DNA of 64,000 nt from IMGVR_UViG_3300040801_001224:124001-188000; one strand, 5' to 3'. Numbered from the stretch's first letter, positions 1,593 through 46,919 are shown. Numbers and translations are program-made. Notes: generated by a model not told the origin, from the sequence alone.

Positions 1593-2045
1593 ATGAGACT
1601 CAATGAATTAAAGGGCCAAACAATTCACCAAAAAGTAGACAATTTTATAACATCTGTTAGTGAACAGTATGGCACATCATGGTTATTTGACACACACGTA
1701 TCTAATAGAATGTGGACACGTGGTGATGGCAAACGTTATAAAGAATTATCGAGAATTACGTCATTTTTCAATACTGACCAAATAAAGACCAGAGCGCCTA
1801 AAGATTTAAAGGATCTACCAGATGAAATACAAGATACGCCGGGTGTTATAGACTTACTTTGGAAAGAAATCGAATCTAAAGGCAAGCACGTAGGTCAGTT
1901 GTCAGACGAGTTTCCAAGTATCCCACGTGGTGATTGCTATGTATTAGATAAGGTGTTATATGTACGTAGAGGTGGTATAGACATCATACAGTATGGTTCA
2001 CTTGGACGCCTTAAAAATTCTGAAGTTTGGAATACTAAAAAATGA
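1593..2045 (+). CDS. Putative head-internal protein (MRLNEL tag)
   Basis: Late promoter at 1531; shared N-terminal motif. Confidence 0.7.
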   Translation: MRLNELKGQTIHQKVDNFITSVSEQYGTSWLFDTHVSNRMWTRGDGKRYKELSRITSFFNTDQIKTRAPKDLKDLPDEIQDTPGVIDLLWKEIESKGKHVGQLSDEFPSIPRGDCYVLDKVLYVRRGGIDIIQYGSLGRLKNSEVWNTKK

Positions 2046-3145
2046 GGCTATTTGAACTAACAAATCCACCAGCTAAAACTAAGACTATTACATTCACCTT
2101 TGGTAGAATGAATCCGCCCACGGTAGGTCACGGTAAGTTAATTCAAAAAGTAATGGACGTTGCGGGCGGTGAAGAATTTGTTATCATCCCAACAAAGACT
2201 CAAGACAAGAAAAAGAACCCATTATCATTTGAACAAAAAGTTCACTTCCTTAATGAAATGTTTCCATTAGTTGAAGGTCACATTGCTTTAGACTCAAACA
2301 TTAAAACTGTATTTGACGCAATGAAATCATTTGATGCGGCAGGTGTTAAGCAAGTGACGATGGTTGTAGGTGATGATCGTGTAGCACAGTTTGATAAACT
2401 ACTAAATAGCTACAACGGTAAAGAATACAACTTTGACGCCATCAACATTGTGTCAGCAGGACAACGTGATCCAGACAGTGATGGCGTAGAAGGTATGTCA
2501 GCATCTAAAATGCGTGAAGCGGCTGTTAACGATGATTACGAAACATTCCAACAAGGCTTACCACAAGGCTTCGACGGACAGGAAATGTTCCAGGCAGTAA
2601 AGCAAGGCATGGGACTTACGGAAGGATATAAGGAAGAACCAACGCCACCGAAAGGCGGTAGAACAGGCCCGACAAACTCCACTGTTGCCAAACGTCAAAT
2701 GGCATATAAAGATGGCAAACTATCTAAAGGCTCCGGCTTAACGAAAGGCTGGACTCCTGAAGCAAAAGCTGAAAAAGCCGGATACCCACCTTCAAGCCCA
2801 CTGTATAAATATTTCTTACAAGGATTAAATGAAGCAGAAGAACATTGTAAAACATGTGGTGGCGAAGGCGTTGTATATTGGGATTATGACGATCCTGAAG
2901 TAGGCACTACAGTCAAAGCAACGGCACCATGCCCAGCTTGCTCTGTTACGGAAGCTAAAAAGCCAGTAAAATTAACAAAGCGTGAAAAAGACGCAATTGC
3001 CGACTGTAAGCGTCATGGCGTACCACTGCCTAGCTGGTTACATGACAAAGTAAAATCATTAGAAGAAGACGCAGACAACAAAGAAGCAGACCAGTATCGC
3101 AACTGGGGTCTTAAAGGAAAATTCATCTATTCCGGTTGGGGCTAA
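2042..3145 (+). CDS. HxGH-class cytidylyl/adenylyltransferase-like protein with appended small modules
   Basis: FGRMNPPTVGH, VVGDDR, SAGQRDPD, MSASKMR; MRLFEL N-terminus; CxxC..CPxC module near the C-terminus. Confidence 0.85.
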   Translation: MRLFELTNPPAKTKTITFTFGRMNPPTVGHGKLIQKVMDVAGGEEFVIIPTKTQDKKKNPLSFEQKVHFLNEMFPLVEGHIALDSNIKTVFDAMKSFDAAGVKQVTMVVGDDRVAQFDKLLNSYNGKEYNFDAINIVSAGQRDPDSDGVEGMSASKMREAAVNDDYETFQQGLPQGFDGQEMFQAVKQGMGLTEGYKEEPTPPKGGRTGPTNSTVAKRQMAYKDGKLSKGSGLTKGWTPEAKAEKAGYPPSSPLYKYFLQGLNEAEEHCKTCGGEGVVYWDYDDPEVGTTVKATAPCPACSVTEAKKPVKLTKREKDAIADCKRHGVPLPSWLHDKVKSLEEDADNKEADQYRNWGLKGKFIYSGWG

Positions 3146-3154
3146 AATAAAAGG

Positions 3155-3183
3155 TTGACACTACCACATTTATCCTGTATACT
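3155..3183 (+). promoter_or_regulatory. sigma70 promoter
   Basis: TTGACA-17-TATACT. Confidence 0.8.
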
Positions 3184-3211
3184 GTAACACACTATAGTAA
3201 CGGAGGGATAA

Positions 3212-3757
3212 ATGAATACACCCAAGCAAGAAAACATTGTTAATACAGTACTCAGAGTACGCAATCCCGAGGGTCTAAAGGACCTGCAACAAAACATTGA
3301 TATCGCAATCCATAATATTTATGAAAACCGGGCGGTTATGGTTGCCGATTTCCGTAAAGAATTATTCGCAAATAAAGTAAGTAATGAATATTTTAGTAAC
3401 TGGAACATGTCTGAAGATGGCACTGTGACGGTAAAACAGAAAAGTCCAAAGAAGCCACCATCTAGTGGCCCATTTAATGCTGTGACACAAGATTATAGCT
3501 ATGACATAAAAGAATATAATAATTTAATACGCTATGCTTATAGAAAGGTGATAGGCAACTTACAAAACGCAAAGCGTTCAGTTGATATGGCAATTAAATA
3601 TGACGGTGAAGTAGATATCCCTGGTGATGTGCTAAATAACATTGAGTTCTTTGGAAACGAACCAGAGAGCAGAAAGAAAGTGAAAGATTTCGGTGAGAGA
3701 GCCGTAAGTAAATTTTTTAAGAATCGTACTAATAGAAATAAAACCCAAGCTTGGTAA
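3212..3757 (+). CDS. Hypothetical protein
   Basis: 181-aa ORF with GGAGG RBS. Confidence 0.75.
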   Translation: MNTPKQENIVNTVLRVRNPEGLKDLQQNIDIAIHNIYENRAVMVADFRKELFANKVSNEYFSNWNMSEDGTVTVKQKSPKKPPSSGPFNAVTQDYSYDIKEYNNLIRYAYRKVIGNLQNAKRSVDMAIKYDGEVDIPGDVLNNIEFFGNEPESRKKVKDFGERAVSKFFKNRTNRNKTQAW

Positions 3758-3767
3758 GGAAAATATA

Positions 3768-5176: not shown

Positions 5177-5182
5177 TTTGCT

Positions 5183-5302: not shown

Positions 5303-5328
5303 ATAAATACTACAAACGGAGAATTATT

Positions 5329-6584: not shown

Positions 6585-6905
6585 ATGATAACATTAACGG
6601 AAACTGCGATTGAAAAAGCTAAAGAACATTTGGAAGGCCGTGGTAACGGAGTGGGTATACGTTTCGGTGTCACTACCACTGGCTGTTCAGGTTTGGCGTA
6701 TATTATTGAGTTTTGTGATTCTGTACTTGATACTGATGTAGTACAAGAACAGGACGGCTTAAAACTTGTGATAGACAAGAAACACCTTGCGTACATTGAG
6801 GGTTCTAACGTCGACTACGTAAAAGAAGGCTTAAACGAAGGCTTCGAATTCTCTAACCCAAACATGAAAGCCGAGTGTGGCTGTGGAGAATCATTCACGG
6901 TATGA
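6585..6905 (+). CDS. iscA: A-type Fe-S cluster carrier IscA
   Basis: GCSGLAY and CGCGESF motifs. Confidence 0.95.
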   Translation: MITLTETAIEKAKEHLEGRGNGVGIRFGVTTTGCSGLAYIIEFCDSVLDTDVVQEQDGLKLVIDKKHLAYIEGSNVDYVKEGLNEGFEFSNPNMKAECGCGESFTV

Positions 6906-7620: not shown

Positions 7621-8259
7621 ATGATCGTAGGAATACTTGGTCTCAAAGGCGCTGGCAAGGATACAATAGGCGATTATCTTGTTGAAAATTATGGTTTTGA
7701 AAAAGTAAGTTTTGCCTCAGCTCTTAAAGATGCCACTGCCGCCATTTTTGGTTGGGACAGAGATATGTTAGAAGGGAATACACCTGAAGCACGTGAACAG
7801 AGAGAACAACCTGACGAGTTTTGGTCAGAGAAGTTAGGATATGATTTTACACCACGTTACGCCTTACAGTACATTGGCACAGACGTAATGCGTAAGAACT
7901 TTTATGATGGTATTTGGATTGCGGCACTTGAAAAGAAACTATCAAACCCAGACAAAGACTATGTAATTACAGATGTGCGTTTCCCAAATGAAGTAACCTT
8001 ATTGAAGAATTTGGGTGCGACATTAGTGGAAGTACAGCGTGGTGAACAACCAGAATGGATGGAGTTAGCATCTAAAGCAAACGCTGGTGATAAAGACGCT
8101 CAGCATCAGATGTATATGAATTTCAAGGATGTTCACATCTCAGAATGGGCATGGGCCGGTTCAGACGTCAATGTTGTTATTCCCAATGATGAAACGTTTG
8201 AAGAATTATATGATAAAATTGAGGTTCAAGTTAAAGAGCCATTCTTTAACCAAGCGTAA
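7621..8259 (+). CDS. Deoxynucleoside monophosphate kinase
   Basis: GLKGAGKDT P-loop; PRYALQYIGTDVMR; ITDVRFPNE. Confidence 0.93.
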   Translation: MIVGILGLKGAGKDTIGDYLVENYGFEKVSFASALKDATAAIFGWDRDMLEGNTPEAREQREQPDEFWSEKLGYDFTPRYALQYIGTDVMRKNFYDGIWIAALEKKLSNPDKDYVITDVRFPNEVTLLKNLGATLVEVQRGEQPEWMELASKANAGDKDAQHQMYMNFKDVHISEWAWAGSDVNVVIPNDETFEELYDKIEVQVKEPFFNQA

Positions 8260-8474
8260 ACAGTTTTAGTCGTTACACCATATTTGACGGCAATATCTTT
8301 TACAGATAGGCCGTCATTTCTATCTTGTATAGCAGAATCCCTATCACCTTTTCTATTCTTTAAATTAGGCTTCCCCGTCTTAGAATCACTGATTTTTTTC
8401 TTAGTGACATCAGAATGTTTGCGACCAGCAAAGCCACTTGGTATTTTTTGTATGATAATAGGTTTTATATCCAT
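8226..8474 (-). CDS. NUMOD3 plus HTH DNA-binding protein with no nuclease domain
   Basis: GRKHSDVTKKKISDSKTG; LSVKDIAVKYGVTTKTVYAWL; late motif on - strand at 8483-8490. Confidence 0.65.
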   Translation of the reverse strand: MDIKPIIIQKIPSGFAGRKHSDVTKKKISDSKTGKPNLKNRKGDRDSAIQDRNDGLSVKDIAVKYGVTTKTVYAWLKNGSLT

Positions 8475-8604
8475 GTCATATTTATTTATCTTGATAAATA
8501 ATAAGAACAAACGGGTTTTATTTATCATCAGGCTCAAATTTTAACCATTAACGTTATACGAGTGTATGGGTGAATAAGAAGAATTAGAAACAGGAGATTA
8601 TACT

Positions 8605-10991: not shown

Positions 10992-11016
10992 GGGCTACTT
11001 CGGTAGCCCTTTTTTT
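10992..11016 (+). terminator. Rho-independent terminator
   Basis: GGGCTAC-TTCG-GTAGCCC followed by a T run. Confidence 0.9.
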
Positions 11017-11290
11017 ATCTTAATTTTTTGCGTTTGAATTTAATGATTGGAAGCTCTAAATTGAGCCTTCTAAGATGGGAATATGCGGCACAGTTTTCTT
11101 TAATGTTGTCATTTAAGATAGTAGAATATATTTTATCGTCTATTCTGTATATTTCAATTAGTTCATATATTGACTGTGCTTCCTGGTCAACAGAATCCAT
11201 TATGCCAGTGAGCAAATGAGTGGCATTCGTTTCTAATAAATCCTTTGATTCCCTTGATAGGTCGCCTAATCTTCTGAATATAACATACAT
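11015..11290 (-). CDS. Hypothetical protein (leaderless, late)
   Basis: ATG 5 nt after GATAAATA on - strand (11296-11303). Confidence 0.6.
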   Translation of the reverse strand: MYVIFRRLGDLSRESKDLLETNATHLLTGIMDSVDQEAQSIYELIEIYRIDDKIYSTILNDNIKENCAAYSHLRRLNLELPIIKFKRKKLR

Positions 11291-11322: not shown

Positions 11323-11823
11323 ATGAAGATAAGCGAGATACATACAACTAGTCCACAAGGGAGAGACTTTAATAAATGGGATAAGAACGAGTATTCAGAC
11401 AGGACTCCTTTTAACCCAGAGGATAAGAAAGACTTCCAGTATGTTGGCAAGAAAGGTCAACTGAGTGTATGGCACGACAGAGAGAACCCAGGTATATTCA
11501 CAGCATTCTCTGGTAAGAAATGGGCGATGGCTGTGACTACTAAAAAGACTAAATTTGGTAGACAGATTGCCACAACAACTAGCAGTCCAGAGTTTCGTGG
11601 ATTCAAGATGGCGCAATTTCTGTATAAACTTATCGCAAAAAAGACGGGAAGTCTAGCAAGCGACTCAATACTATCACCAGTAGCCAACAGTATGTGGCAG
11701 AGTTTTGAAGGTGACTCACAGGTAGAGTTAGAAGTAGTTGACAGAAACACAGGCAAATCTCGTCCATACGAAGGAGATTTAGATGATACTGTGTCCTTTG
11801 TTTATCGCATCATTCCAAACTAA
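11323..11823 (+). CDS. GNAT-fold acetyltransferase-like protein with MKISEI tag
   Basis: SPEFRGFKMAQFLY...LASDSILSPVANSMWQSF resembles the GNAT acetyl-CoA loop and downstream helix. Confidence 0.6.
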   Translation: MKISEIHTTSPQGRDFNKWDKNEYSDRTPFNPEDKKDFQYVGKKGQLSVWHDRENPGIFTAFSGKKWAMAVTTKKTKFGRQIATTTSSPEFRGFKMAQFLYKLIAKKTGSLASDSILSPVANSMWQSFEGDSQVELEVVDRNTGKSRPYEGDLDDTVSFVYRIIPN

Positions 11824-15322: not shown

Positions 15323-15703
15323 ATGGCATACTCAGATAAAGTTATTGATCATTATGAAAATCCACGTAACGTCGGCTTTATTGAAGAAGACGGCGATGGC
15401 ATTGTTGGTACTGGCATGGTCGGTGCCCCGGCCTGTGGTGACGTAATGAAATTGCAGATCAAAGTAGACAACGATGGTATCGTCAAAGACGCAAAGTTCA
15501 AAACCTATGGCTGTGGCTCAGCAATCGCATCCAGTTCATTAGTCACAGAATGGGTAAAAGGAAAACCGGTAGACGAAGTAGCTGAAATTAAAAATACCCA
15601 AATAGCTGAAGAGTTATGTCTCCCACCAGTCAAAATACACTGCTCAGTACTCGCAGAAGACGCAATTAAATCAGCAATTAGCGATTATAAGTCAAAACTA
15701 TAA
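15323..15703 (+). CDS. iscU: Fe-S scaffold IscU
   Basis: YSDKVIDHYENPRNVG, GAPACGDVM, YGCGSAIASSS, LPPVKIHCS. Confidence 0.97.
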   Translation: MAYSDKVIDHYENPRNVGFIEEDGDGIVGTGMVGAPACGDVMKLQIKVDNDGIVKDAKFKTYGCGSAIASSSLVTEWVKGKPVDEVAEIKNTQIAEELCLPPVKIHCSVLAEDAIKSAISDYKSKL

Positions 15704-17578: not shown

Positions 17579-18184
17579 ATGTCAACATTTTTAGAAATAC
17601 TACAAGAAAATCAAAAGGAATATGCTTTCACAGTTAAGATCGCATGTCCAGACGTAACAGACGAGATGCTAGATTGTATGGAAGATTGTTTATCACGATA
17701 CGACCTTGTGTCAGCATCAAAGTTTAAGAAATCTCCACTACAAAAGAATCCATTAGACTTCCCGAGAGTTGAAAATTCAGAAGTACACACTTCAGATATC
17801 GTAACTCAGTATCCATTTACATCGGATATGCTGGAAGTTCAGCTATGTAAGGCATTGGATATTCCACGTACACACCTAGTTGTTTACTCAGAAAATGATC
17901 CACGTGCGGCATACAATGAAGAGAATGCTCCGCAAGGAGAGTACACAGCGAGAATTGGTACAGTAGTAGACGCAAGCGAAGAAGAAGATGCTTCAGAACT
18001 AGGCGGACAAGCGCAAGTTGACAGCGCAATTGAAGATGCCCTGGAGAAGCGTAAAGATCGTCGTATAGATCGTGTCATTAATGACTTATCGCACGAAGAA
18101 GCGTTTGACGATGCAGAATTTGAGTTTGCTGACCGTGATGGCGAAAACACACGCTCAGTATTCTTTGGTAGAGTAAAGGATTAA
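17579..18184 (+). CDS. Probable head-internal/structural protein
   Basis: MSTFLEILQE N-terminus, similar to T4 capsid-targeting sequences; late promoter at 17540. Confidence 0.65.
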   Translation: MSTFLEILQENQKEYAFTVKIACPDVTDEMLDCMEDCLSRYDLVSASKFKKSPLQKNPLDFPRVENSEVHTSDIVTQYPFTSDMLEVQLCKALDIPRTHLVVYSENDPRAAYNEENAPQGEYTARIGTVVDASEEEDASELGGQAQVDSAIEDALEKRKDRRIDRVINDLSHEEAFDDAEFEFADRDGENTRSVFFGRVKD

Positions 18185-33044: not shown

Positions 33045-33391
33045 ATCATTGGATGTGGGATACATACGGAAAAGTAGAAGAAAGAGTATACGATCATGGG
33101 AATGGCTGGCAGGAAATTGATATGCCATGCGTTTACACGTTTCATTATGACGGAAGAGTGTTATCTCTGAAAAAAGATTGCCTAGGAGACTATTCGTTTG
33201 TACAGCATGAAATAAGTGTTGCCAAACACATGGGTGGCTGGAACCATATATGGAAAATGGGGAGACCGTCATCGTGGCGTATTAGGTTATCGAAGAAAAA
33301 CTTTTTTCTATTGGAACTGACACGCGATTTTAATATGCTTGCTGAAGCTGTCAATGCTAATCCTGATAATTTTGAGAGTGTTACGATTTAA
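33041..33391 (+). CDS. Hypothetical protein
   Basis: Coupled ORF. Confidence 0.6.
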   Translation: MNHWMWDTYGKVEERVYDHGNGWQEIDMPCVYTFHYDGRVLSLKKDCLGDYSFVQHEISVAKHMGGWNHIWKMGRPSSWRIRLSKKNFFLLELTRDFNMLAEAVNANPDNFESVTI

Positions 33392-33764
33392 CTACTAATT
33401 TTATTTGACGTCTTTTGATTCTTTTAGTGACTAGACTGTTGAGTGATGTGATTGGACCGAATATTACTTCTACTTCTTTTGTTTTAAACGTTTGTAGGTA
33501 TTGAGAGAACGGTTTCATTTGCCCCTGCATAAATATATTGATGGGCAACAAGCGATTGGACTCATTCCACCAGTTATCGCCATATTGAAGAAATAACTTT
33601 TTCTCTTCAGGGGTGCGAATAGAGTCAAAGTCATAAAAACTTAAGACCTTATCGTCAGTATTTTGTATAATACCAAGCATTTCGTTCTCTTGCCATACGA
33701 TACACGTTAAGAATGGGTAGGCACTGGCGATTTTGTCTTGGTCATCGCTTATTTTTATTTCCAT
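33381..33764 (-). CDS. Conserved hypothetical protein (leaderless, late)
   Basis: YPFLT..GIIQN..WWNESNRLLPINIF; TATAAATA on - strand 5 nt before ATG. Confidence 0.75.
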   Translation of the reverse strand: MEIKISDDQDKIASAYPFLTCIVWQENEMLGIIQNTDDKVLSFYDFDSIRTPEEKKLFLQYGDNWWNESNRLLPINIFMQGQMKPFSQYLQTFKTKEVEVIFGPITSLNSLVTKRIKRRQIKLVVKS

Positions 33765-37168: not shown

Positions 37169-37216
37169 ATTACCATTTATTTGATAAATACACTAAAGCA
37201 TTAAAGGGAGTCTGTT

Positions 37217-37465
37217 GTGACACGTAAGAGTTTATTTGAAGAATTAAATGAATTGGCGCCTGTTTCTACTAGGGAAGTGGTTTTAGAAAGCCGAGCAACT
37301 CATGCCATTTCATCAATAATTAATTTATTCGAATATATTGAAGATAACTTTGCCGAAGAAGAAGCTATAAATTTACAACGTAGATTGATCAGCAGTATCA
37401 AAGGCAAAGATCCAAAACGTTTTTCACGTGCTTTAGCTAAGATCACCAAAGGCGACACAGAGTAA
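37217..37465 (+). CDS. Small conserved late protein
   Basis: GTG start with GGGAG RBS; late promoter at 37183. Confidence 0.7.
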   Translation: MTRKSLFEELNELAPVSTREVVLESRATHAISSIINLFEYIEDNFAEEEAINLQRRLISSIKGKDPKRFSRALAKITKGDTE

Positions 37466-38925
37466 TGAGGCTAGACCAAATCCGCCCGCTTAAAGAACGA
37501 GCAGGCGGTATCACACACATCGAAGATTTGGCCATTGATGAGCTAATATCAGCACTTAGAAATTTTGAAGAATATGAAATTTCAGAAAAAATTGATGGAT
37601 CAAACCTACAATTCGGATACGACGGTGACGGGTTTTATACTAGTCGTGAGTCGAAAGCCGGAGATGAAAGAATGCGCTCTGTGGACGACTATCCAATACA
37701 ATACAGCACCACATTTCAAAGATCAGCACACCTAGCACTAGAAAAAGTTATGCCACTCATCATACGTAGTGAATTTTTTACTACTGGTGACGCAGTTGAA
37801 GTTGAAGTATTATTTGGTAAGCTACCGAACGCTGTGCCATATAACGACGATGCGAACCGCATCATATTCTTACGCCCCATATCAGGAAACCCAGACATTG
37901 AGGGGTTAAGCGATCTATTGGAAGGGCAACGAATTCGAGTTGAAGTAGATGCGCCATTCAGTTTAAATGGCAAAACTATGGATATTCGTCCAGAACGTCA
38001 TGTTTGGGAATTTGCCCAGACGCCAACAGTTAATGGTAATGAAGTTGTCAAGGGTGAAGCCAAACAGGAACTAGAATCCAAACTAGATGAAATAGAGACA
38101 TTTTTGAAACAGCCGAGTGGCATTGGTGGTTTCAGTAATGCTGAAGCTATTTCATTGCCGTTGAATAAGCGTCCGGAAGGAATCAGTACTTCTGAATGGA
38201 AAGAAGCAAAAGAAGCGATAAAGTCACTACGTAAGAAATTTTACGATGTTTCTGATGATGGAACTCCTACTGGATTCAAGCAGGATATCAAGGAGTTTCT
38301 ATTAAAGCGTTTAGTTAGGACTATAGGCAGTGCCTTTGGCCCAGAAGTTTCAGACGGTGGCTGGATTGAGGGTGTCGTGTTCCGTCACAAAGACACTAAC
38401 CAAATGTTTAAGGTTGTTGATAAGGATATGTTTACTGCCGTTAAGAAATTCATATGGAAAGTTAGAGATGAGTTAAGTGAAAAGCCAAAAAGTGTCAACA
38501 CCATTAGCTCCTTTATGGGTAAGGTCCTAGTGGGATTGGGGACGTCACTTGGTATCCCCGAGTTAGGAACTTTCCAGGCTAAACGAGCACTCAAAAAACA
38601 CGGCAGTACACGGGAAGAAATACTGTCAAATCTCAGTAAGGAAATAGACTTTGACAACACTAAATCTTATTGGGAAAAATTTATCACTGATCAACAAGAG
38701 AAGTTTAACAAAGAGTTAGATAAATACATAAAAGGCAGAAAAGACCTGTCATTCACCGCAAACGATCGAACGTTTAAATATGACGATGAAGTCCATGCTA
38801 GAACACTTCAAGTATTTGAGAGTGTTAATAGAATACTAAAAGGCTTTTTAGAAAATACTAGAAAAGCCAAGTCGGCAGAAGACCTAATAATGCTATTGGT
38901 TGGTCGACAATTACAGGACATATAA
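37465..38925 (+). CDS. ATP-dependent RNA-ligase-superfamily nucleotidyltransferase with MRLDQI tag
   Basis: Motif I EKIDGSN, motif III EVEVLF, motif IV EGVVFR, motif V FKVVDK. Confidence 0.75.
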   Translation: MRLDQIRPLKERAGGITHIEDLAIDELISALRNFEEYEISEKIDGSNLQFGYDGDGFYTSRESKAGDERMRSVDDYPIQYSTTFQRSAHLALEKVMPLIIRSEFFTTGDAVEVEVLFGKLPNAVPYNDDANRIIFLRPISGNPDIEGLSDLLEGQRIRVEVDAPFSLNGKTMDIRPERHVWEFAQTPTVNGNEVVKGEAKQELESKLDEIETFLKQPSGIGGFSNAEAISLPLNKRPEGISTSEWKEAKEAIKSLRKKFYDVSDDGTPTGFKQDIKEFLLKRLVRTIGSAFGPEVSDGGWIEGVVFRHKDTNQMFKVVDKDMFTAVKKFIWKVRDELSEKPKSVNTISSFMGKVLVGLGTSLGIPELGTFQAKRALKKHGSTREEILSNLSKEIDFDNTKSYWEKFITDQQEKFNKELDKYIKGRKDLSFTANDRTFKYDDEVHARTLQVFESVNRILKGFLENTRKAKSAEDLIMLLVGRQLQDI

Positions 38926-38927
38926 TA

Positions 38928-40019
38928 ATGAACTTAAGAGAACAGTTTGACAAATTTAAATTAGATGAAAGGGCATTGAGTGATATGTCTACTTATCGAC
39001 AAGCCATGTCTATTTTAAATCAGCGAGCCAAAGCTGGTGATTCTCAAGCAATCTCTCTTAAAAACAAAGTTCTTAAAATGATTGGCGATAAGGGCATCTC
39101 ACACAAATCTGTTATTGGCATGATGAACACTCTTCCGCAGTTTACCCTTAAAGAAGGCGGCAATGCTGTAGAAGGTGTTGGCCCAATAAACCAAGAAAAT
39201 GTCGAAGCTACCATGGCAGTAATCTATAAAGAATTATTGCCGGCGCTAGGATTGTCCAAATCAGACACAGCATCATTGGGTAGTACAGGAAAGAAAGGTC
39301 CTGGCCAGCAGAGCGGTGATATTGATCTTGCGGTTAGTGTTCAGGCATTGACCAAAAACAATAATATCGAAACGCCAGCAGACTTATATACATTCATCGA
39401 GCAAACACTTCAAAAGTTTACTGATAGAACTAGAATCATGGGTGGAATTGGCATTGTCACTTGTGCGTGGCCAATCAGTAACACCGACGGCAAGCAGGAA
39501 GGTGAATTTGTCCAGTTGGATATAATGACTGTTGACAGTGTTGATTGGGCTCGTTGGGCATTCTTTGCGCCATCATTTGATCAGTCACCATATAAAGGAT
39601 TGTATAGGAACGAAATACTATATGCGATTGCTCGGTATATGGATTATGAGTCGTTAGAAACAGCACTAGATAAAGAAGGCGTTGAGGTAGATGCTCGTTG
39701 GAAACGTAAGTTTTATGACTTAGGAAAAGGCATCTTATCAGGCGAGCAGTCACGTATGGGCAAGAAGGGAATTGTTAAGACAGTTAAAACACTGAATAAA
39801 GAAATATTGTCTCAGAATCCAGAAGAAGCTGTGACAATGTTTTTCGGCCCAGACTTCAAGCCAAATGATATGTTGACGTGGGAGCAAGCCTTTGCCGCAA
39901 TTATGGACAGCGATTTCATACATGCTGATCATAGACAAGAAATATTGCAGATGACAAAGCAGGGTATACTCAATAAAGGCTACCCTATTCCACCAGAACT
40001 AGATGAGGTGACAGCATGA
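38928..40019 (+). CDS. Pol-beta-superfamily nucleotidyltransferase
   Basis: LGSTGKK...SGDIDLAV (GS...DxD) and third Asp in VQLDIM; domain begins at LKE|GGNA. Confidence 0.78.
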   Translation: MNLREQFDKFKLDERALSDMSTYRQAMSILNQRAKAGDSQAISLKNKVLKMIGDKGISHKSVIGMMNTLPQFTLKEGGNAVEGVGPINQENVEATMAVIYKELLPALGLSKSDTASLGSTGKKGPGQQSGDIDLAVSVQALTKNNNIETPADLYTFIEQTLQKFTDRTRIMGGIGIVTCAWPISNTDGKQEGEFVQLDIMTVDSVDWARWAFFAPSFDQSPYKGLYRNEILYAIARYMDYESLETALDKEGVEVDARWKRKFYDLGKGILSGEQSRMGKKGIVKTVKTLNKEILSQNPEEAVTMFFGPDFKPNDMLTWEQAFAAIMDSDFIHADHRQEILQMTKQGILNKGYPIPPELDEVTA

Positions 40020-40603
40020 GACTAGATGAAATAGCACAAACGCCAGTAGAAGAAACGGCGGGTGACTTAGTAAGACCAGAAGATGAAAGAATGGGTGATG
40101 ACAAAACAACACACCTAGTCTATGATGATGGCGACTTTAAAGTATGGTGGACACCTGCCAAAGATATGTTTGAGATTACAGAAATGCAGGAAGATGGCTG
40201 GGTAGAAGGCCGGTTTAAAGCTAAAGCGTTTAGTGTAACAAAAGCAGAACAAATCGCTGAAAAGTACATGACGACAAAATGGTACGAAGGCATTGACGAA
40301 AGCGTTACAGAAGAAGCAAATGAGTTAAACATTGAAGTCCACCAAACAGATCAGTGGACTGACGAAGGCAACCCAGAATATTATGAGCCAGATGTAGAAA
40401 ATACACAATACGAAGTAAATATTGGTGGCGAATTAGTGGGTGAAATGACATACGACAATTACTTTGGCTACTTAGCTGGTAACATTGGCAATCGCACGGT
40501 GCAACTGGAAATGAGATACGAAGAATCTGCTGAAGATTGTGTTAAGCGTTATTTCGCAACACCAACAGGTCAAAAGCATCTTAAAGTAATGGGATTCGCA
40601 TAA
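40016..40603 (+). CDS. Putative head-internal modular protein (MRLDEI tag)
   Basis: Two modules separated by IDE|SVTEE|. Confidence 0.65.
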   Translation: MRLDEIAQTPVEETAGDLVRPEDERMGDDKTTHLVYDDGDFKVWWTPAKDMFEITEMQEDGWVEGRFKAKAFSVTKAEQIAEKYMTTKWYEGIDESVTEEANELNIEVHQTDQWTDEGNPEYYEPDVENTQYEVNIGGELVGEMTYDNYFGYLAGNIGNRTVQLEMRYEESAEDCVKRYFATPTGQKHLKVMGFA

Positions 40604-40878
40604 TGTTTGAAATAGTATTAGATATATTTTTAATAACACTTATGGTGGCAGGTATTTTTTGTACACTACTAGGTCTATTAACAGTATTCTATTGGTTCAA
40701 GCCTGCCGAACCACCAGCAGACACAAGCAACAGAATAAATAATATTACGTCGTGGTGGACTGGTTTAACACGTACAAATGTAATGGCAAAAGAATATAAG
40801 TTTTTTCGTCAAGACGTGATGGACAATATAAATGATGTTGAAACACAAGACGAAGTAAATAGACACAGGGAAAAATAA
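40603..40878 (+). CDS. Small membrane protein
   Basis: About 30-aa hydrophobic N-terminus. Confidence 0.65.
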   Translation: MFEIVLDIFLITLMVAGIFCTLLGLLTVFYWFKPAEPPADTSNRINNITSWWTGLTRTNVMAKEYKFFRQDVMDNINDVETQDEVNRHREK

Positions 40879-41609
40879 TGACTGAACACAGTAAACAATG
40901 GCCATTCACAAAAGAAGATGATGGAGACTTTTCATTCTTTCGTGAATTAAATGAGAACAAAGTATTCCGTAATAAATCTGATTTACAGAGAATATCTCAT
41001 GACACGTCAAAAGAATTGCTATACCTGAGTATTTTAGCTACAATAGCATTGTCACAAGAATCTAATACAGCAGACGAAGCGCAGGACCTAGCGTCACGTA
41101 CTGCTACATTTAATAACTTTGACACGTTTAAAGTGGCACTTCCAGACCTATATAACTTGTCACATATGCACTTTGGTGATACAAGTTATGATGATCTGGG
41201 TGTTGAAACGCAGTGGAAAAAGAATGCTACTAAGCCATTAAAAGGATTATACATTAGACTGTTACGTAGTATCGGCCACGGCACAATGCGTGATGCAGAA
41301 GCGTCACAATTTCTACTAAAGTTAGAACGTGCGTTAGATATTGATAATGGTGTTTACAAGCAAATACGAAGAGTTGTTTCCAATTGGAATAGAAATGACA
41401 GCAAAGAAAAGTCATCTACATTCAAGCGTTTGTATCGTTACATTAGAGCATTGAGTCCACGTAGTGAAATGCTACCAATCATAAAGAAACAGACTGGTAC
41501 GGTAGGCGCAATGACTAACACACAGAAGGCGGCACTTGGTGTTGGTATATTTGGCGCAGGCGTTTTAGCTGGTTATAAAATGACTAGAAATCCAAAAGGA
41601 AAGAAGTAA
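40878..41609 (+). CDS. Conserved late (probable virion) protein
   Basis: FFRELNE| junction; C-terminal GVGIFGAGVLAGY hydrophobic tail. Confidence 0.7.
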   Translation: MTEHSKQWPFTKEDDGDFSFFRELNENKVFRNKSDLQRISHDTSKELLYLSILATIALSQESNTADEAQDLASRTATFNNFDTFKVALPDLYNLSHMHFGDTSYDDLGVETQWKKNATKPLKGLYIRLLRSIGHGTMRDAEASQFLLKLERALDIDNGVYKQIRRVVSNWNRNDSKEKSSTFKRLYRYIRALSPRSEMLPIIKKQTGTVGAMTNTQKAALGVGIFGAGVLAGYKMTRNPKGKK

Positions 41610-42619
41610 TGTTAGTGAGCGAAGTCCTGTTTGAACATTATATTAGTGATAAGGACATCATGCACATCTTCAAACGAGCTGTTGAGCTCGTAGACCAAAC
41701 TGGCAAAAATAAAACCAGTGTCGGAAGAATAGTTACGCCTACTAAAAAGCCAATCACACCTGATGATAGTGACGAAAAACTTGAGTCTTTAGCACATTCC
41801 GATATAACCCACGCCATATCTGAAGGGCCATTTGATCGCATCAAAACGCTTGGCGGTAATCTCGCCAATAAAGTCACTTTAGACAAACTGCTGAAGAGGT
41901 GGCAGAAATATGGATCAGACAATGATTCGGCAGTAGTTCTAGCAGTGCTAAGAAACAGCGATGTTCCAGATGAAATTATTTCACAGTTACAGAAAGAAAC
42001 CACGTTAGGAAAAGATGTATCATCAGATAGCGATAAAGGCGGCATCAATAACGGTGAGCAGATCAATAAGAACAGAGCAGACGGTGATATAATTAAAGGC
42101 GATAAAGAAGAAGCAGTTGACGGCATCAAAACGTCTATGAGTTACATGTCAAACTGGGGCAAACAAGGCCAAGATATTGGTGATAATTATAATGTGACGA
42201 TGAAGTCAATAGACAATTCGGAATCACTAAGTGATGACGAGAAGGAAACCGCAAAAGGCGCAGTAAACCAATACGCACAAGCTACTGAGTTTAGAGAAAA
42301 GACTGAATTACTATATAGTCAATACCAGGAAGCCATCCGACGAGTATATCAGCAGGACAATGAGGGTGAAGCTAATTCCCATGGCGATCCACGTATGCTC
42401 GCAAAATTCTTATTAAATAGGTCAACTGACTTCTCTAAAGAAGAATATTTAGCAATGCCTGACGAAGAAAAAGCTAGAGTAGACAATTTACAGGCTAAGA
42501 TAGAAAGATTGCGTAAAGATTTTGGCAATAAGACATCCGGTGCTAAAGGAGATGACCTAAAATATGCCATCGAAAAATTGTGGAAAAAGCAACCAAAAAT
42601 CGTTAAGAGTGATAAATAA
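41609..42619 (+). CDS. Putative head-internal protein (MLVSEVLFE tag)
   Basis: Tag, plus ISE|GPFDRIK junction. Confidence 0.65.
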   Translation: MLVSEVLFEHYISDKDIMHIFKRAVELVDQTGKNKTSVGRIVTPTKKPITPDDSDEKLESLAHSDITHAISEGPFDRIKTLGGNLANKVTLDKLLKRWQKYGSDNDSAVVLAVLRNSDVPDEIISQLQKETTLGKDVSSDSDKGGINNGEQINKNRADGDIIKGDKEEAVDGIKTSMSYMSNWGKQGQDIGDNYNVTMKSIDNSESLSDDEKETAKGAVNQYAQATEFREKTELLYSQYQEAIRRVYQQDNEGEANSHGDPRMLAKFLLNRSTDFSKEEYLAMPDEEKARVDNLQAKIERLRKDFGNKTSGAKGDDLKYAIEKLWKKQPKIVKSDK

Positions 42620-42952: not shown

Positions 42953-42979
42953 TAGCTAAGTACTAACACACTATTATTG

Positions 42980-43547: not shown

Positions 43548-43548
43548 T

Positions 43549-43782
43549 ATGAGATTAATAGAAATAGCTGAAAGTGTGCCGGTGTATAAAGGCGATCCTA
43601 TATATGATGAGAGATTCATTACAAGAAGACTCCATGATAATATTCTTGCTCGGCTACAACAGGACTATCCTGATGCGGTACTAACAAAAATTGGTCCACT
43701 TGATGACGGCGGTGTTATAGCTTTTATTGAACCAGACGAAGGTTTTATATTTCATAAGGAATATGTTGAGGCTAACAAATGA
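43549..43782 (+). CDS. Small putative head-internal protein (MRLIEIAE tag)
   Basis: Start reassigned to 43549, just after the upstream stop. Confidence 0.6.
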   Translation: MRLIEIAESVPVYKGDPIYDERFITRRLHDNILARLQQDYPDAVLTKIGPLDDGGVIAFIEPDEGFIFHKEYVEANK

Positions 43783-44066
43783 AGATAACAGAGATTATTA
43801 TAGAACAAAAAGAAGAAGAAGTTTGCGAAGCTAGGATGGCTTGGGCTAGAAAAGGCAACAAAGTTGTTCGTAAGTACCGCTGTACTTCAGGCCCACGCAA
43901 AGGTAGAGTTGTATCAAATCCAACACAATGTTCAAAGCCAATTGACATAAAGAAGCGCATGAATTTAAAAAGAACAAAAGCGGCAAACGCTACACGAATT
44001 AAACGTAAGACAGCTAGGACAAAACGCTTAAACCCAGCGTCTAAAATGCTAAAGAGGTTAAACTAA
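43779..44066 (+). CDS. Basic prohead core/DNA-binding-like protein (MKITEIIIE tag)
   Basis: Acidic leader then a K/R-rich body with RCTSGPRKGRVV..C. Confidence 0.7.
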   Translation: MKITEIIIEQKEEEVCEARMAWARKGNKVVRKYRCTSGPRKGRVVSNPTQCSKPIDIKKRMNLKRTKAANATRIKRKTARTKRLNPASKMLKRLN

Positions 44067-44623
44067 TGATAAGAAAATTAAACGAGACTATGCAGATGTT
44101 ATCTGAAGAATCACTAGCAGACAAGCTACAAAAGGAAATGGGCATTGAAGCCACTGAAGAAGTTAAAGAGTTGGGATTCACAGAATATTTGGAAGTTGCT
44201 TCTGCCCTAGAAGCCGGTGATGAAATGATGGTGCGTGACCTGCTTGGATTGGGTCTTGAAGAAGACTACACGAAAGCTAAAGTAACTGATGTGCGTCCGG
44301 GACAAGAATTAACATATCAGGATGACAAGGGTCGTGAGACGAAAGTTGATTTGCGTGATCCAGATCATGAACTAGGTTTAGCAGTATTGGATATGACAGG
44401 AAACCGACCAGCATTGGACGATCGTGGCGAAGATGTTACGCCAAATGCCAAAGAGATTGAACGTGGTGACGAGTTTATGATTGATCTAGAAGAAATGAAA
44501 AAATTGGCTGGCATTGAAGATGAAGATGGCGCTGAAGAGGAAGTTGAAGAAACAACCTCAGCAGGCGGAATCGCAGTAGCGGCACAGCCAATGGGAAAGA
44601 TGATAAAACGTAAGAAGAAGTAA
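44066..44623 (+). CDS. Acidic head-internal modular protein
   Basis: LSEE|, LEE|, EMKKLAGI, VEE|TTSAGGIA...MIKRKKK. Confidence 0.65.
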   Translation: MIRKLNETMQMLSEESLADKLQKEMGIEATEEVKELGFTEYLEVASALEAGDEMMVRDLLGLGLEEDYTKAKVTDVRPGQELTYQDDKGRETKVDLRDPDHELGLAVLDMTGNRPALDDRGEDVTPNAKEIERGDEFMIDLEEMKKLAGIEDEDGAEEEVEETTSAGGIAVAAQPMGKMIKRKKK

Positions 44624-45057: not shown

Positions 45058-45105
45058 TTTGAGAACTCTGATAAATATAACAAATACACTAGGGAAATTA
45101 CAACT

Positions 45106-46020
45106 ATGTTATTAAATGAATTTAACCGTTCAGACGCTAAAAATGAGTATAAAAGCTCTGTCCGTTTATTAGAATCTACTTATGGTGTAAAGATTAAAGA
45201 AACTGACGACCTTCATAACCTATTTGTAGCCGCTTCTAAAGCTGGCGCAATCATGGAGAACTTACGTTTACAGAACCGCACTATTGAAGACAAAGAGTAT
45301 TCAAAGTACGCCTTAATCAAGGAAGCCATTACTTCTAAAATTGACGCCATATATGAGGAGCGTGTTCAAAACTTACTAGAGTTTGAAGGCATTCCATCAG
45401 TCAACACTGGTTCTGCTAAGTTCCGCAGAATATTAGACGCTACAGTAGCTCGTGCTATTGAGCAATACGATTCAGGTATGGATCTAGAAGATGTTACACG
45501 TAATGCTGTTTACGCATTCCGTAACACACCGGGTATCGTTATTCCAAGCGAAATCTTCAAAATTGAATTTGAAAAAGCATTCTTACAGAAGCTATACTTC
45601 TCGGGACGTGAGCCAGAAATGAGTCAAGCTCCAAGCTATAGTGACACAGAGCGTCCAGCGGCTACATTGCTAGATAGTATCACAGAAGAAGAACTAGCCG
45701 AAGCACTAGCTAACATGGAAGCAGTTATTGAAGGTAAGCTAACAGAAGATTCAGATGTTGACCAAGCACGTTTACAGGAAATTGCTGAAGCTATTATTAA
45801 TGAAGGTGACTTTTACAGTAGCAAAGACAAGAAAGGTAACGCTATTGGCAAGCAACAAGCAGACGTAGCAAGTAAGTACCTAGACTTTTTAGGTAGTGAT
45901 TTAAAATTAGATGGTGAAGAAGAGCCAATCGAAGTTAAATTTGGTAAAGACAAAGCAATGTCTCCAGCAGACAAAGCTAAAATAGCAAGAATTAAAAAAG
46001 CCGCGGCGGCTCAAAAATAA
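45106..46020 (+). CDS. Prohead core/scaffold-like protein (MLLNEF)
   Basis: Late promoter at 45070; repeated LLE, LTE and INE junctions. Confidence 0.6.
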   Translation: MLLNEFNRSDAKNEYKSSVRLLESTYGVKIKETDDLHNLFVAASKAGAIMENLRLQNRTIEDKEYSKYALIKEAITSKIDAIYEERVQNLLEFEGIPSVNTGSAKFRRILDATVARAIEQYDSGMDLEDVTRNAVYAFRNTPGIVIPSEIFKIEFEKAFLQKLYFSGREPEMSQAPSYSDTERPAATLLDSITEEELAEALANMEAVIEGKLTEDSDVDQARLQEIAEAIINEGDFYSSKDKKGNAIGKQQADVASKYLDFLGSDLKLDGEEEPIEVKFGKDKAMSPADKAKIARIKKAAAAQK

Positions 46021-46030
46021 AGGAAATATT

Positions 46031-46579
46031 ATGAACAAAAATTACGTTAAAACAGTAAGAACATTACTAGAAAGCGAAATTGAGCAGGCTGAGGTAATCA
46101 TTGCCGCTAAAGGCTTTGCACAAGAGCTTCAAAACATGATCGAGAAAGTTGGTCGTTTAATGAACGAAGACTTGGGTCCAGTTGTTGACCAGATGCGTGA
46201 AGCATATGGCAATGAAGTGTCAGCAAACTTTGGTGAAATGATGGGTTCTCAGATGCAGGAAGTTATTGACGAACTACGCATTTCTAAAGACAAGATTGAC
46301 GATTCAGTTGACGCTATTGCTTCAGGCCAGATGCCAAGCAATGACGTTGACATGGATGCTGATCTAGACATGGGCGGCGACGATTTAGATTTAGACGCAG
46401 AACTAGAACTAGGTGACGATGACATGGACGGTGATTTAGAAGCTGATCTAGACATGGACGCAGAGCTAGAGCTAGATGACGAACCACAGTTAGGTCGTGA
46501 AACTAAAGAATCTAAAATCGAAGAACTACGCAACAAAATGCGTATGATGGAAGACAAGATCGCAAAAGCTAAGGCATAA
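46031..46579 (+). CDS. Prohead core/scaffold-like protein with acidic low-complexity repeat
   Basis: LLE|SEIEQAEVIIAAK; DMDADLD repeats; LGRETKE. Confidence 0.65.
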   Translation: MNKNYVKTVRTLLESEIEQAEVIIAAKGFAQELQNMIEKVGRLMNEDLGPVVDQMREAYGNEVSANFGEMMGSQMQEVIDELRISKDKIDDSVDAIASGQMPSNDVDMDADLDMGGDDLDLDAELELGDDDMDGDLEADLDMDAELELDDEPQLGRETKESKIEELRNKMRMMEDKIAKAKA

Positions 46580-46580
46580 T

Positions 46581-46919
46581 ATGCGCCTAAGCGAACTAGT
46601 ACTAGAGAGCGATGTAGCTCATGACATAGAAGGCGCCCTAGACAGCCTTCTTATGTCAGTACGTGCTAATGATATTAGCTCAATTGCTACAGATAAAATT
46701 GTTGACCAGTTACGTCAGCAAGGATATAGTGTTTCGACATCATCTTTAATAAACTTTATCGAAGGCAATCCCCTAGTACAAAACGCTACAGTTGATAACA
46801 TCACTTTCAAACATGCAGACAATTATGCTGTTAGTGGTGATGCAGAATCAGCAGAAAAGAATAAAGAAAAAGTCCACAGCATGGCTAAGAAAGCGGCTAT
46901 GAAGGGCATTAAACAGTAG
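46581..46919 (+). CDS. Putative head-internal protein (MRLSELVLE tag)
   Basis: Tag; C-terminal VHSMAKKA. Confidence 0.7.
   Translation: MRLSELVLESDVAHDIEGALDSLLMSVRANDISSIATDKIVDQLRQQGYSVSTSSLINFIEGNPLVQNATVDNITFKHADNYAVSGDAESAEKNKEKVHSMAKKAAMKGIKQ

What the first reader, a model, noticed from the sequence alone, without database searches (positions are those of the whole stretch)
1593..46919. Shared N-terminal packaging tag marks a dispersed set of enzymes as virion cargo (candidate injected enzyme kit)
Seen: unrelated ORFs in late-promoter operons begin MRLNEL (1593), MRLFEL (2042), MRLRELITE (6902), MKISEI (11323), MRLDQI..LKE (37465), MNLREQF..LDE (38928), MRLDEI (40016), MLVSEVLFE (41609), MRLIEIAE (43549), MKITEIIIE (43779), MLLNEF (45106), MRLSELVLE (46581) and the variant MSTFLEILQE (17579). 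I saw no such start among the sigma70-driven genes. Known: T4 internal proteins use a roughly 10-aa capsid-targeting sequence removed by the gp21 protease after [LI]-x-E. Inference: five tagged proteins are enzymes (HxGH nucleotidyltransferase, Asp-Lys-Cys hydrolase, GNAT, RNA-ligase-like, Pol-beta NTase). They would be co-ejected with the DNA and act before any phage transcription, forming a modular address-tag system for counter-defence or host takeover.
Basis: partly seen in the sequence, partly recalled or inferred. Interest (0 to 1): 0.82.

Follow-up and report, generated by a model that had tools for sequence, protein, structure and literature searches.

The report
Phage head-packaging tag on many proteins
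Thirteen unrelated late proteins of this uncultured jumbo phage start with the same short peptide, which looks like a local version of phage T4's known capsid-targeting sequence, so the phage probably loads several enzymes into its head; this extends a known mechanism rather than revealing a new one.

Summary
All 13 quoted N-termini exist. The strict motif M-[RK]-[LI]-x-E-[LI] opens 8 of 89 genes against about 0.014 expected. Its codons vary synonymously. All 13 tagged genes sit in T4-type late-promoter operons and none in sigma70-type ones.

The tag is a one-residue-shorter dialect of the T4 capsid-targeting sequence (CTS). Three cargo families (HxGH cytidylyltransferase, a DUF6267 Pol-beta-like nucleotidyltransferase, and the 6902 family) carry the window-type tag in close relatives. 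The first two carry a near-canonical T4 CTS (MKxFKxFLxE) in distant relatives. In all three the leader lies directly before the conserved domain. The clade encodes the T4 gp21-family protease (Peptidase_S77). Relatives put the tag on Alt-like ADP-ribosyltransferases and on the small protein after the portal gene. The cytidylyltransferase family was detected by others in purified cyanophage virions.

Not shown here: packaging, cleavage or ejection in this phage, its own protease gene (outside the window), and any counter-defence role.

The enzyme claims hold for two proteins, are leads for two (GNAT, ligase-like), and are unresolved for one. I rate it a new variant of a known kind, of moderate-to-high interest.

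The parts
1593..2045 (+). Tagged ORF (150 aa), MRLNEL...; function unknown. First gene behind the late promoter at 1531.
   Evidence: No Pfam or PHROG hit. Atlas search uninformative.
2042..3145 (+). Tagged ORF (367 aa), MRLFEL...; HxGH cytidylyltransferase-like enzyme. The tag lies 20 residues before the Rossmann core FTFGRMNPPTVGH.
   Evidence: Pfam CTP_transf_like 24.1 bits (cut-off 21). PHROG cytidyltransferase 1.7e-60. Close homologs start M[RK]L[FY]ELT; distant ones carry a T4-type CTS. Family detected in S-SM1 virions (PMC3037559).
6902..7555 (+). Tagged ORF (217 aa), MRLRELITE|G...; conserved alpha/beta protein with invariant D19, K107, C193.
   Evidence: 89 of 120 homologs are tagged, with consensus MRAxEFITE-G and E9 invariant. 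AF2 pLDDT is 55 for the first 10 residues and 94 for the next 10. No significant PDB fold match.
11323..11823 (+). Tagged ORF (166 aa), MKISEI...; GNAT-like acetyltransferase (lead only). Own late promoter 13 nt upstream.
   Evidence: Atlas: viral N-acetyltransferase clusters, score 0.96, TM about 0.7.
17579..18184 (+). Variant tag of full T4 length, MSTFLEILQE|N; acidic virion protein two genes upstream of the large terminase gene.
   Evidence: phrog_14802 'virion structural protein'. Orthologs CBB_210 (MNKLQKILTE|L) and PA5oct gp202 are MS-verified. 0 internal [LIV]xE against 3.9 expected.
37465..38925 (+). Tagged ORF (486 aa), MRLDQIRPLKE|R; ligase-like, with KxDG motif EKIDGSN.
   Evidence: Pfam RNA_ligase 22.7 bits, below the 27 cut-off. 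Sequence. PA5oct ortholog gp228 (MNIAEI) has no ESI-MS/MS flag.
38928..40019 (+). Tagged ORF (363 aa), MNLREQ...KLDE..., with a long leader of about 75 aa ending FTLKE|GGNA; Pol-beta-like nucleotidyltransferase whose relatives hit DUF6267.
   Evidence: 115 homologs have leaders ending [LIV]xE before GGNA. E76 is at least 90% conserved; G118, S119, D131, D133, D198 are invariant. AF2 pLDDT 89.9 overall but low for residues 1-75. Foldseek matches Pol beta/lambda, E 3e-5.
40016..40603 (+). Tagged ORF (195 aa), MRLDEIAQTPVEE; acidic, function unknown.
   Evidence: The positional counterpart in PA5oct, gp230 (MRLDEIQSKTPV), carries the ESI-MS/MS flag.
41609..42619 (+). Tagged ORF (336 aa), MLVSEVLFE|H; function unknown.
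   Evidence: 1 internal [LIV]xE against 4.4 expected.
43549..43782 (+). Tagged small ORF (77 aa), MRLIEIAE|S.
43779..44066 (+). Tagged small, very basic protein (95 aa, pI 11.2), MKITEIIIE|Q; resembles T4 internal proteins.
   Evidence: 43 homologs in related loci keep M-x-[LI]-x-[ED]-[LIV]. pI.
45106..46020 (+). Tagged ORF (304 aa), MLLNEF...; acidic and rich in internal [LIV]xE sites, so probably a scaffold or core protein.
   Evidence: 13 sites against 6.6 expected, P = 0.005. In relatives a tagged N-terminal part is fused to the phrog_14154 domain: tagged L019:7263, and MS-positive PA5oct gp237 whose C-terminal part matches w46031.
46581..46919 (+). Tagged ORF (112 aa), MRLSELVLE|S; virion protein family.
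   Evidence: phrog_15050 'virion structural protein', aligned from residue 1. Orthologs start MR[ALIFY]x[EQ][LI]. PA5oct gp238 (VKIKDILVE|S) is MS-positive.
37183..37190 (+). T4-type late-promoter motif heading the operon 37217-42619, which holds four tagged genes. Similar motifs lie at 1531, 5302, 11310, 17540, 43048 and 45070.

Best explanation
The shared N-terminus is this lineage's version of the phage T4 capsid-targeting sequence (CTS). It is a short amphipathic leader of the form M-[RK]-hydrophobic-x-E-hydrophobic-hydrophobic-x-E. The leader would bind the scaffolding core while the prohead assembles, so whatever protein follows it is built into the head. The T4 gp21-type prohead protease (Peptidase_S77) would then clip it after a hydrophobic-x-Glu site, either at residue 9 or at a later site in longer leaders, and release the mature protein among the DNA. 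Shown here: the motif, its restriction to late genes, its conservation, its interchangeability with the canonical T4 CTS in the same families, the protease family in the clade, and the virion presence of several family members in other phages. Inferred: physical packaging and cleavage in this phage. Inferred by analogy with T4 Alt and IPI: ejection of the enzymes (cytidylyltransferase, Pol-beta-like NTase, probable GNAT, ligase-like protein) with the DNA.
For: (1) The motif is extreme in frequency and occurs only in late genes. (2) With a one-residue gap it aligns with the T4 leaders fetched here: IPII/III MKTYQEFIAE, gp24 MAKINELLRE, Alt MELITELFDE. T4 CTS positions 4 and 7 (targeting) and 8 and 10 (processing) (PMC9026906) map to hydrophobic residues 3 and 6 in 12 of 13 tags and to hydrophobic-x-E at 7-9 in 5 of them. 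The 17579 variant has the full T4 length and fits both pairs at the T4 positions. (3) Three families switch or keep the leader at one position. DUF6267: MRLDELKQPLKE|GGN against MKTFKQFLKE|GGNA. Cytidylyltransferase: MRLFELT... against MKSFKQYVSE|AP, and Syn9 gp184 MKKFSAFLSE. The 6902 family: MRAxEFITE|G with the Glu invariant. (4) The tag moves to the new N-terminus when a domain is fused in front, and some entries start exactly at the predicted cleavage point. (5) In a T4-like phage (L222) the equivalent post-helicase module has at least 8 proteins with the T4-type CTS, including an ART-PolyVal enzyme. (6) In relative L130, four tagged proteins, two of them ART-PolyVal (the enzyme class of T4 Alt), sit between the portal and scaffold genes. 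(7) The small ORF after the portal gene (the T4 gp67 position) carries the tag across the clade, and the major capsid proteins begin MSxxLFE. (8) The protease is Peptidase_S77 in PA5oct, L096 and L130. (9) Virion mass spectrometry: 5 of 7 motif-starting PA5oct proteins are flagged against a 20% baseline (Fisher P = 0.0045); the CBB_210 ortholog is flagged; and 'citidylyltransferase T4-GC190' was found in purified S-SM1 virions (PMC3037559). (10) AF2 gives low confidence to the leaders and high confidence to the domains.
Against: There is no direct evidence of packaging, cleavage or ejection for any protein of this phage. Its own portal, protease and capsid genes lie outside the window and could not be fetched. 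PA5oct orthologs of the ligase-like and cytidylyltransferase proteins have no ESI-MS/MS flag, and the PA5oct virion list also contains obvious non-structural proteins, so it is noisy. Several tags (2042, 11323, 1593, 45106) have only the first hydrophobic-x-E at residues 3-5, and cleavage there is not established. The expected depletion of internal [LIV]xE sites in cargo is only suggestive (ratio 0.78 against about 1.12 in controls, P about 0.09). The strict motif is rare in 80 capsid-centred loci beyond the post-portal protein.
Confidence: 0.75

Rival explanations
1. The tag marks prohead-core or scaffold components only. These proteins would help build the head and then be cleaved and largely expelled, so there would be no injected enzyme kit.
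For: w45106 is enriched in internal [LIV]xE sites (13 against 6.6), as is T4 gp22. The post-portal small protein occupies the gp67 (core protein) position. T4 core proteins gp67, gp68 and gp22 have similar N-termini. Several tagged proteins are acidic with no enzyme signature.
Against: At least two tagged proteins are enzyme folds with intact catalytic motifs, and a third is a GNAT-like lead. ART-PolyVal enzymes carry the tag in relatives. The cytidylyltransferase is found in mature virions. w17579 and w41609 have few or no internal sites.
Confidence: 0.12
2. The N-terminus is a recognition signal for the phage's own Clp machinery (ClpX at 60216, ClpS at 62396). On this view it is a degron or adaptor tag that times the stability of late proteins and is unrelated to the capsid.
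For: The phage encodes ClpX and ClpS, and PA5oct also encodes ClpA and ClpP. From established knowledge of ClpX substrates, some N-terminal ClpX motifs begin Met-basic-hydrophobic.
Against: This does not explain interchange with the T4 CTS, in a phage where no Clp genes were annotated. Nor does it explain the invariant Glu at the domain boundary, the placement in head modules, or the virion detection of tagged proteins.
Confidence: 0.04
3. The pattern is an mRNA or translation-initiation feature of late genes: AT-rich early codons or a downstream-box-like element.
For: The tag codons are A/T-rich, and many tagged genes are translationally coupled (ATGA overlaps).
Against: The conserved residues use several synonymous and non-synonymous codon families. 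The most highly expressed late genes (sheath, tube) lack the motif. The motif is defined by amino-acid class with a free position 4 and persists at 30-60% protein identity.
Confidence: 0.02
4. The pattern reflects chance or shared ancestry: the tagged genes are paralogs that inherited one N-terminus.
For: 43549 and 43779 are adjacent small genes, and some relatives carry tandem copies.
Against: Tagged proteins fall into at least 20 clusters with no detectable similarity and different folds. The chance expectation is 0.014.
Confidence: 0.01

Closest known systems
[quoted passage not shown]
   Same: It sits at the extreme N-terminus, is about 10 residues long, and has hydrophobic residues at the two targeting positions and hydrophobic-x-Glu at the processing positions. 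It is attached to unrelated proteins expressed late. The clade has a protease of the same family (Peptidase_S77). Its cargo includes small basic proteins and, in relatives, ADP-ribosyltransferases. [quoted passage not shown]
   Different: The consensus is one residue shorter and uses Leu/Ile where T4 has Tyr/Phe (M-R-L-x-E-L against M-K-T-Y-Q-E-F). There is an extra hydrophobic-x-Glu at residues 3-5. The tagged genes are far more numerous (13 in 64 kb, about 30% of the late genes here). They are dispersed over several operons rather than grouped in IP loci. Several are sizeable enzymes. Nothing has been tested experimentally in this lineage.
Ejection (E) proteins and N-terminal propeptides of phiKZ-like giant phages (phiKZ, 201phi2-1, SPN3US)
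   Same: These are jumbo myoviruses that pack many proteins into the head. A gp21-related protease cuts after Glu and removes N-terminal propeptides (PMC10052503).
   Different: Those phages use an [A/S/G]-x-E motif and mostly long propeptides (20 to 254 residues), with no short shared leader. The present clade is T4/Rak2/PA5oct-like, not chimallivirus-like.
Cyanomyovirus core 'cytitidyltransferase' (T4-GC190; Syn9 gp184)
   Same: It belongs to the same protein family as w2042. It carries an N-terminal CTS-type leader (Syn9 gp184, MKKFSAFLSE). It was detected in purified S-SM1 virions (PMC3037559).
   Different: It carries the T4-type rather than the MRLxEL-type leader. The cited paper treats it as a virion protein of unknown role and never uses the terms 'capsid targeting' or 'internal protein'.

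Membership tests
T4-type capsid-targeting sequence / gp21-cleaved N-terminal propeptide | Located at the extreme N-terminus of the precursor and about 10 (7-19) residues long | tested here: met
   All 13 tags start at Met-1. The tag moves to the new N-terminus in domain fusions.
T4-type capsid-targeting sequence / gp21-cleaved N-terminal propeptide | Hydrophobic residues at the two targeting positions (T4 IPIII residues 4 and 7) | tested here: met
   12 of 13 tags have hydrophobic residues at the equivalent positions 3 and 6, or 4 and 7 in w17579. The positions are defined in PMC9026906.
T4-type capsid-targeting sequence / gp21-cleaved N-terminal propeptide | Ends in a hydrophobic-x-Glu cleavage motif at the boundary with the mature domain | tested here: met
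   E9 is invariant in the 6902 family. E76 before GGNA is at least 90% conserved in DUF6267. 6 of 13 window tags have hydrophobic-x-E ending at residue 9 or 10, and the others have sites at residue 5 and/or residues 8-24. This is sequence-level evidence only.
T4-type capsid-targeting sequence / gp21-cleaved N-terminal propeptide | The phage encodes a gp21-family (Peptidase_S77) prohead protease | tested here: inconclusive
   Met in relatives PA5oct, L096 and L130. The head module of this contig lies outside the window and was not recovered.
T4-type capsid-targeting sequence / gp21-cleaved N-terminal propeptide | Sequence similarity to the T4 consensus MKT[YF]xEF[IT]xE | tested here: inconclusive
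   w17579 (MSTFLEILQE) matches in length and pattern. The main tag matches only with a one-residue gap and aliphatic residues in place of aromatic ones. Homologous families bridge the two forms.
T4-type capsid-targeting sequence / gp21-cleaved N-terminal propeptide | The tagged protein is physically inside the capsid and the leader is removed | not testable with these tools
   Indirect evidence only: PA5oct ESI-MS/MS flags, CBB_210, and the S-SM1 virion cytidylyltransferase. No peptide-level data were available.
T4-type capsid-targeting sequence / gp21-cleaved N-terminal propeptide | The leader is sufficient to target a foreign protein into the head | not testable with these tools
   Natural domain fusions keep the tag at the N-terminus, which is consistent with this but is not a test.
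Ejected early effectors (like T4 Alt and IPI) | The protein leaves the capsid with the DNA and acts in the newly infected cell | not testable with these tools
   Rests on analogy only. ART-PolyVal enzymes carry the tag or a CTS in relatives.

The most novel reading that the evidence does not exclude
CTS dialects (MRLxEL here, MKxFKxFLxE elsewhere) may be a readable code across the T4 superfamily. If so, the injected proteome of thousands of uncultured phages could be predicted from sequence alone. Enzymes long filed as 'auxiliary metabolic genes' (the cyanophage cytidylyltransferase, the DUF6267 Pol-beta-like NTase, GNAT, ligase-like proteins) would then be pre-loaded effectors that act on host or phage nucleotides or nucleic acids before any phage gene is transcribed. 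A further speculation concerns cleavage at the first site (L-x-E|L/F). It would expose an N-terminal Leu or Phe, a bacterial N-degron read by ClpS. The phage encodes ClpS, so ejected enzymes could have a built-in lifetime.
Probability: 0.2. Interest if true: 0.8.

Novelty: new variant of a known kind. Interest (0 to 1): 0.6.

Why it matters
If the tag works as inferred, head cargo can be read from genome sequence in a very large and mostly uncultured clade; more than 600 capsid-gene relatives turned up in IMG/VR alone. It would show that these phages deliver whole enzymes at the moment of infection: nucleotidyltransferases, an acetyltransferase, and ADP-ribosyltransferases in relatives. That would reclassify some widespread 'metabolic' phage genes as virion-borne effectors. 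It would also supply alternative CTS sequences for protein-packaging applications, which today rely on the T4 CTS. The tag gives a short, concrete list of candidates for early host take-over or counter-defence factors in jumbo phages such as PA5oct.

Tried and rejected
- Near-identity DNA search of the phage collection found nothing. tblastn of w46581 also found nothing.
- Two attempts to fetch this contig's own head module failed. I used the PA5oct portal and then an 11-sequence capsid-protein alignment as queries. The clade is too populous, and only the best 48 and 80 loci came back.
- No peptide-level PA5oct MS data could be used, because no supplement is held. The PA5oct, RaK2 and CBB papers say nothing about N-terminal leaders.
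- I tested whether tagged proteins are depleted of internal [LIV]xE sites, as protease-exposed cargo should be. With composition-matched shuffles the result is only suggestive (ratio 0.78, P about 0.09), so I do not use it as evidence.
- The fold search for w6902 gave no significant match. phmmer of w37465 against PDB sequences gave nothing. The Atlas search of w1593 gave nothing.
- I considered and rejected paralogy, a codon-level signal, and chance.
- The generic regex M.{0,2}[LIV].E[LIVF] run on T4 also picks gp48 and gp54, which I know of no evidence are gp21 substrates. Loose versions of the motif are therefore not specific on their own.

Full report
**What the window is.** The window is part of a 328-kb uncultured viral contig, IMGVR_UViG_3300040801_001224. 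Almost all genes are on the + strand. By tail-sheath similarity its nearest cultured relatives are the jumbo myoviruses PA5oct (about 53%), Atu_ph07 and the Rak2-like phages. It is syntenic with PA5oct from the neck genes to the ribonucleotide reductase genes. The window holds neck, sheath, tube, large terminase, gp32, UvsX, primase, helicase and RNR genes. It does not hold the portal, prohead protease or major capsid genes.

**Is the motif conserved?** In 207 related metagenomic loci (2.3 Mb) the motif opens 119 sense-strand ORFs and no antisense ORF, always within a few codons of the upstream stop. These ORFs form at least 20 mutually unrelated protein clusters. Orthologs of w43779 and w46581 keep the motif while the rest of the protein diverges to 30-57% identity.

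**What it is.** The decisive evidence came from homologs of three tagged proteins.

- For w38928, 115 homologs all have a short leader ending hydrophobic-x-Glu immediately before the conserved domain start GGNA. Close relatives read MRLDELKQPLKE|GGN and distant ones read MKTFKQFLKE|GGNA. Some database entries begin at MGGNA. The Glu is at least 90% conserved.
- For w2042, close relatives begin M[RK]L[FY]ELT. Nearly all others begin with forms such as MKSFKQYVSE, MKHFKEYLKE or MINSFKNYLTEE, placed just ahead of the FTFGRFNPPTxGH core.
- For w6902, 89 of 120 homologs begin with the tag (consensus MRAxEFITE|G, Glu-9 invariant). A few start at the predicted cut. When another domain is fused in front, the tag appears at the new N-terminus.

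The 'distant' leader is essentially the T4 capsid-targeting sequence. The T4 record gives IPII/IPIII MKTYQEFIAE, IPI MKTFKEF, gp24 MAKINELLRE, Alt MELITELFDE and gp67 MEGLIEA. In T4, residues 4 and 7 of the CTS drive targeting to the core and residues 8 and 10 drive processing. The first 10 residues suffice to package foreign proteins (PMC9026906). With a one-residue gap these positions map to residues 3, 6, 7 and 9 of the window tag. Twelve of 13 tags have the hydrophobic targeting pair. Five have the hydrophobic-x-E processing pair at 7-9, and the w17579 variant has it at the T4 positions 8-10.

**Context that ties the tag to the head.** The clade's protease is Peptidase_S77, the gp21 family. 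Across 48 head modules, the small ORF after the portal gene (the position of T4 core protein gp67) begins MRADEL, MKATEL, MILNEI, MKLNEL or, in PA5oct, MKINDIITE. The capsid proteins begin MSxxLFE. In one relative (L130), four tagged proteins lie between the portal and scaffold genes, and two of them are ART-PolyVal ADP-ribosyltransferases. That is the enzyme class of T4 Alt, which is packaged, clipped and ejected (PMC9026906). In a T4-like phage (L222) the module after the helicase gene, equivalent to window 37-48 kb, has at least eight proteins with T4-type leaders, including the DUF6267 protein and an ART-PolyVal enzyme. AF2 models give low confidence to the leaders and high confidence to the domains behind them.

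**Experimental anchors from others.**

- PA5oct's GenBank record flags MS-detected virion proteins. Five of seven proteins that start with the motif are flagged, against a 20% baseline (P = 0.0045). They include gp230 and gp238, which I matched to w40016 and w46581 by gene order and N-terminal similarity (gp238 also through phrog_15050). That list also contains gp32, UvsX and RNR, so it is noisy.
- CBB_210, the MS-verified ortholog of w17579, has a leader of the same length ending ILTE.
- Most usefully, Sullivan et al. 2010 detected the putative 'citidylyltransferase (T4-GC190)' in purified S-SM1 virions (PMC3037559). This is the family of w2042. Its Syn9 member gp184 starts MKKFSAFLSE.

**The enzyme claims.**

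- HxGH nucleotidyltransferase (w2042): supported.
- Pol-beta NTase (w38928): supported at fold level. The model has pLDDT 89.9, Foldseek matches Pol beta/lambda at E 3e-5, and G118, S119, D131, D133 and D198 are invariant. A relative hits DUF6267.
- GNAT (w11323): a good lead from the Atlas (score 0.96, TM about 0.7).
- Ligase-like (w37465): weak. A KxDG motif is present, but the Pfam score is below the cut-off.
- Asp-Lys-Cys hydrolase (w6902): unresolved. D19, K107 and C193 are invariant, but there is no significant fold match; a cysteine hydrolase appears at probability 0.51.

Other tagged proteins look structural. w43779 is a 95-aa protein of pI 11.2, like the T4 internal proteins. w45106 is rich in internal cleavage motifs, like a scaffold protein.

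**What is not shown.** No protein of this phage has been shown to be packaged, cut or ejected. Its own protease gene was not seen. PA5oct orthologs of the ligase-like and cytidylyltransferase proteins were not flagged in virions. The counter-defence role rests only on analogy with T4 IPI and Alt.

**Comparison and novelty.** The principle, a short portable N-terminal address shared by diverse head-internal proteins, is established for T-even phages (PMC3012670; PMC9026906). What is new is a distinct and more stereotyped dialect in a large jumbo-phage clade, and its scale and dispersal (13 genes in 64 kb). Also new is the link, through shared cargo families, between that dialect and the canonical CTS in cyanophages and other uncultured T4-like phages. 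The cargo is rich in nucleotide-handling enzymes. None of the papers I could read on this clade mention it. I therefore rate it a new variant of a known kind. My confidence is about 0.75 that the tag is a CTS-type propeptide, and lower (about 0.4-0.5) that the enzymes are ejected effectors.

Noticed in passing
window 6585-6905 and 15323-15703: The phage encodes Fe-S cluster assembly proteins: an IscA/HesB-like protein (Pfam Fe-S_biosyn, 3e-18) and an IscU (NifU_N, 1e-52). The IscU gene has its own late-type promoter 14 nt upstream. The IscA-like gene is translationally coupled to tagged w6902.
   Followed up: partly
window 61438-61710: A phage-encoded ribosomal protein bS21 homolog (Pfam Ribosomal_S21, 6e-14) overlaps the end of the ClpX gene by 8 bases. 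PA5oct has the same arrangement.
   Followed up: partly
window 60216-61445 and 62396-62704: The phage encodes ClpX (with zinc finger) and ClpS. This may matter if cleavage at L-x-E|L exposes N-terminal Leu or Phe on cargo.
   Followed up: no
window 55533-56279, 56923-57600, 57887-58378: NAD synthase, GTP cyclohydrolase I and a QueD-like PTPS. The last two suggest 7-deazaguanine (queuosine-type) precursor synthesis, as annotated in PA5oct.
   Followed up: no
window 45106-46020 and 46031-46579: In relatives (PA5oct gp237, 395 aa; L019:7263-8198) a tagged N-terminal part is fused to the phrog_14154 domain, which here is the separate gene 46031. In this phage the unit may therefore be split in two, with only the first half tagged. 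Homology between w45106 and those N-terminal parts was not detected.
   Followed up: partly
window 38928-40019: The leader of this DUF6267 protein is about 60 residues longer than in all but one of the listed homologs (about 75 aa against 10-14 aa). The extra part is helical with low model confidence.
   Followed up: partly
window 11015-11290 (-), 33381-33764 (-), 8226-8537 (-): These are three of the few minus-strand ORFs. Two have late-promoter-like ATAAATA motifs just upstream on their own strand. They may be real antisense-oriented late genes or may be spurious.
   Followed up: no
window 37217-37465, 18189-19445, 44066-44623: These untagged late genes have offset hydrophobic-x-E leaders (MTRKSLFEELNE, MEIKADELAELL, MIRKLNETMQMLSEE). 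They may be further CTS-like propeptides that the strict motif misses.
   Followed up: no
L221 and L222, 15635-16837 (-): An IS605-type OrfB/TnpB (Cas12f1-like) gene is inserted in the cargo module of a T4-like phage. In L221 UvsX carries a faint intein-splicing hit, and in L222 the DnaB helicase gene is split by a minus-strand ORF.
   Followed up: no
L219 12320-17579: A 370-kb phage contig carries an NAD salvage cluster (NMNAT-Nudix, NAMPT, NAD kinase, with NAD synthase at the locus edge) a few kb from its DUF6267 gene.
   Followed up: no
PA5oct record MK797984 (L081-L086): The 93 'ESI-MS/MS' virion proteins include gp32, UvsX, RNR subunits, thymidylate synthase, FtsH and ClpP. The list therefore mixes true virion parts with abundant contaminants or unusual cargo.
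   Followed up: partly
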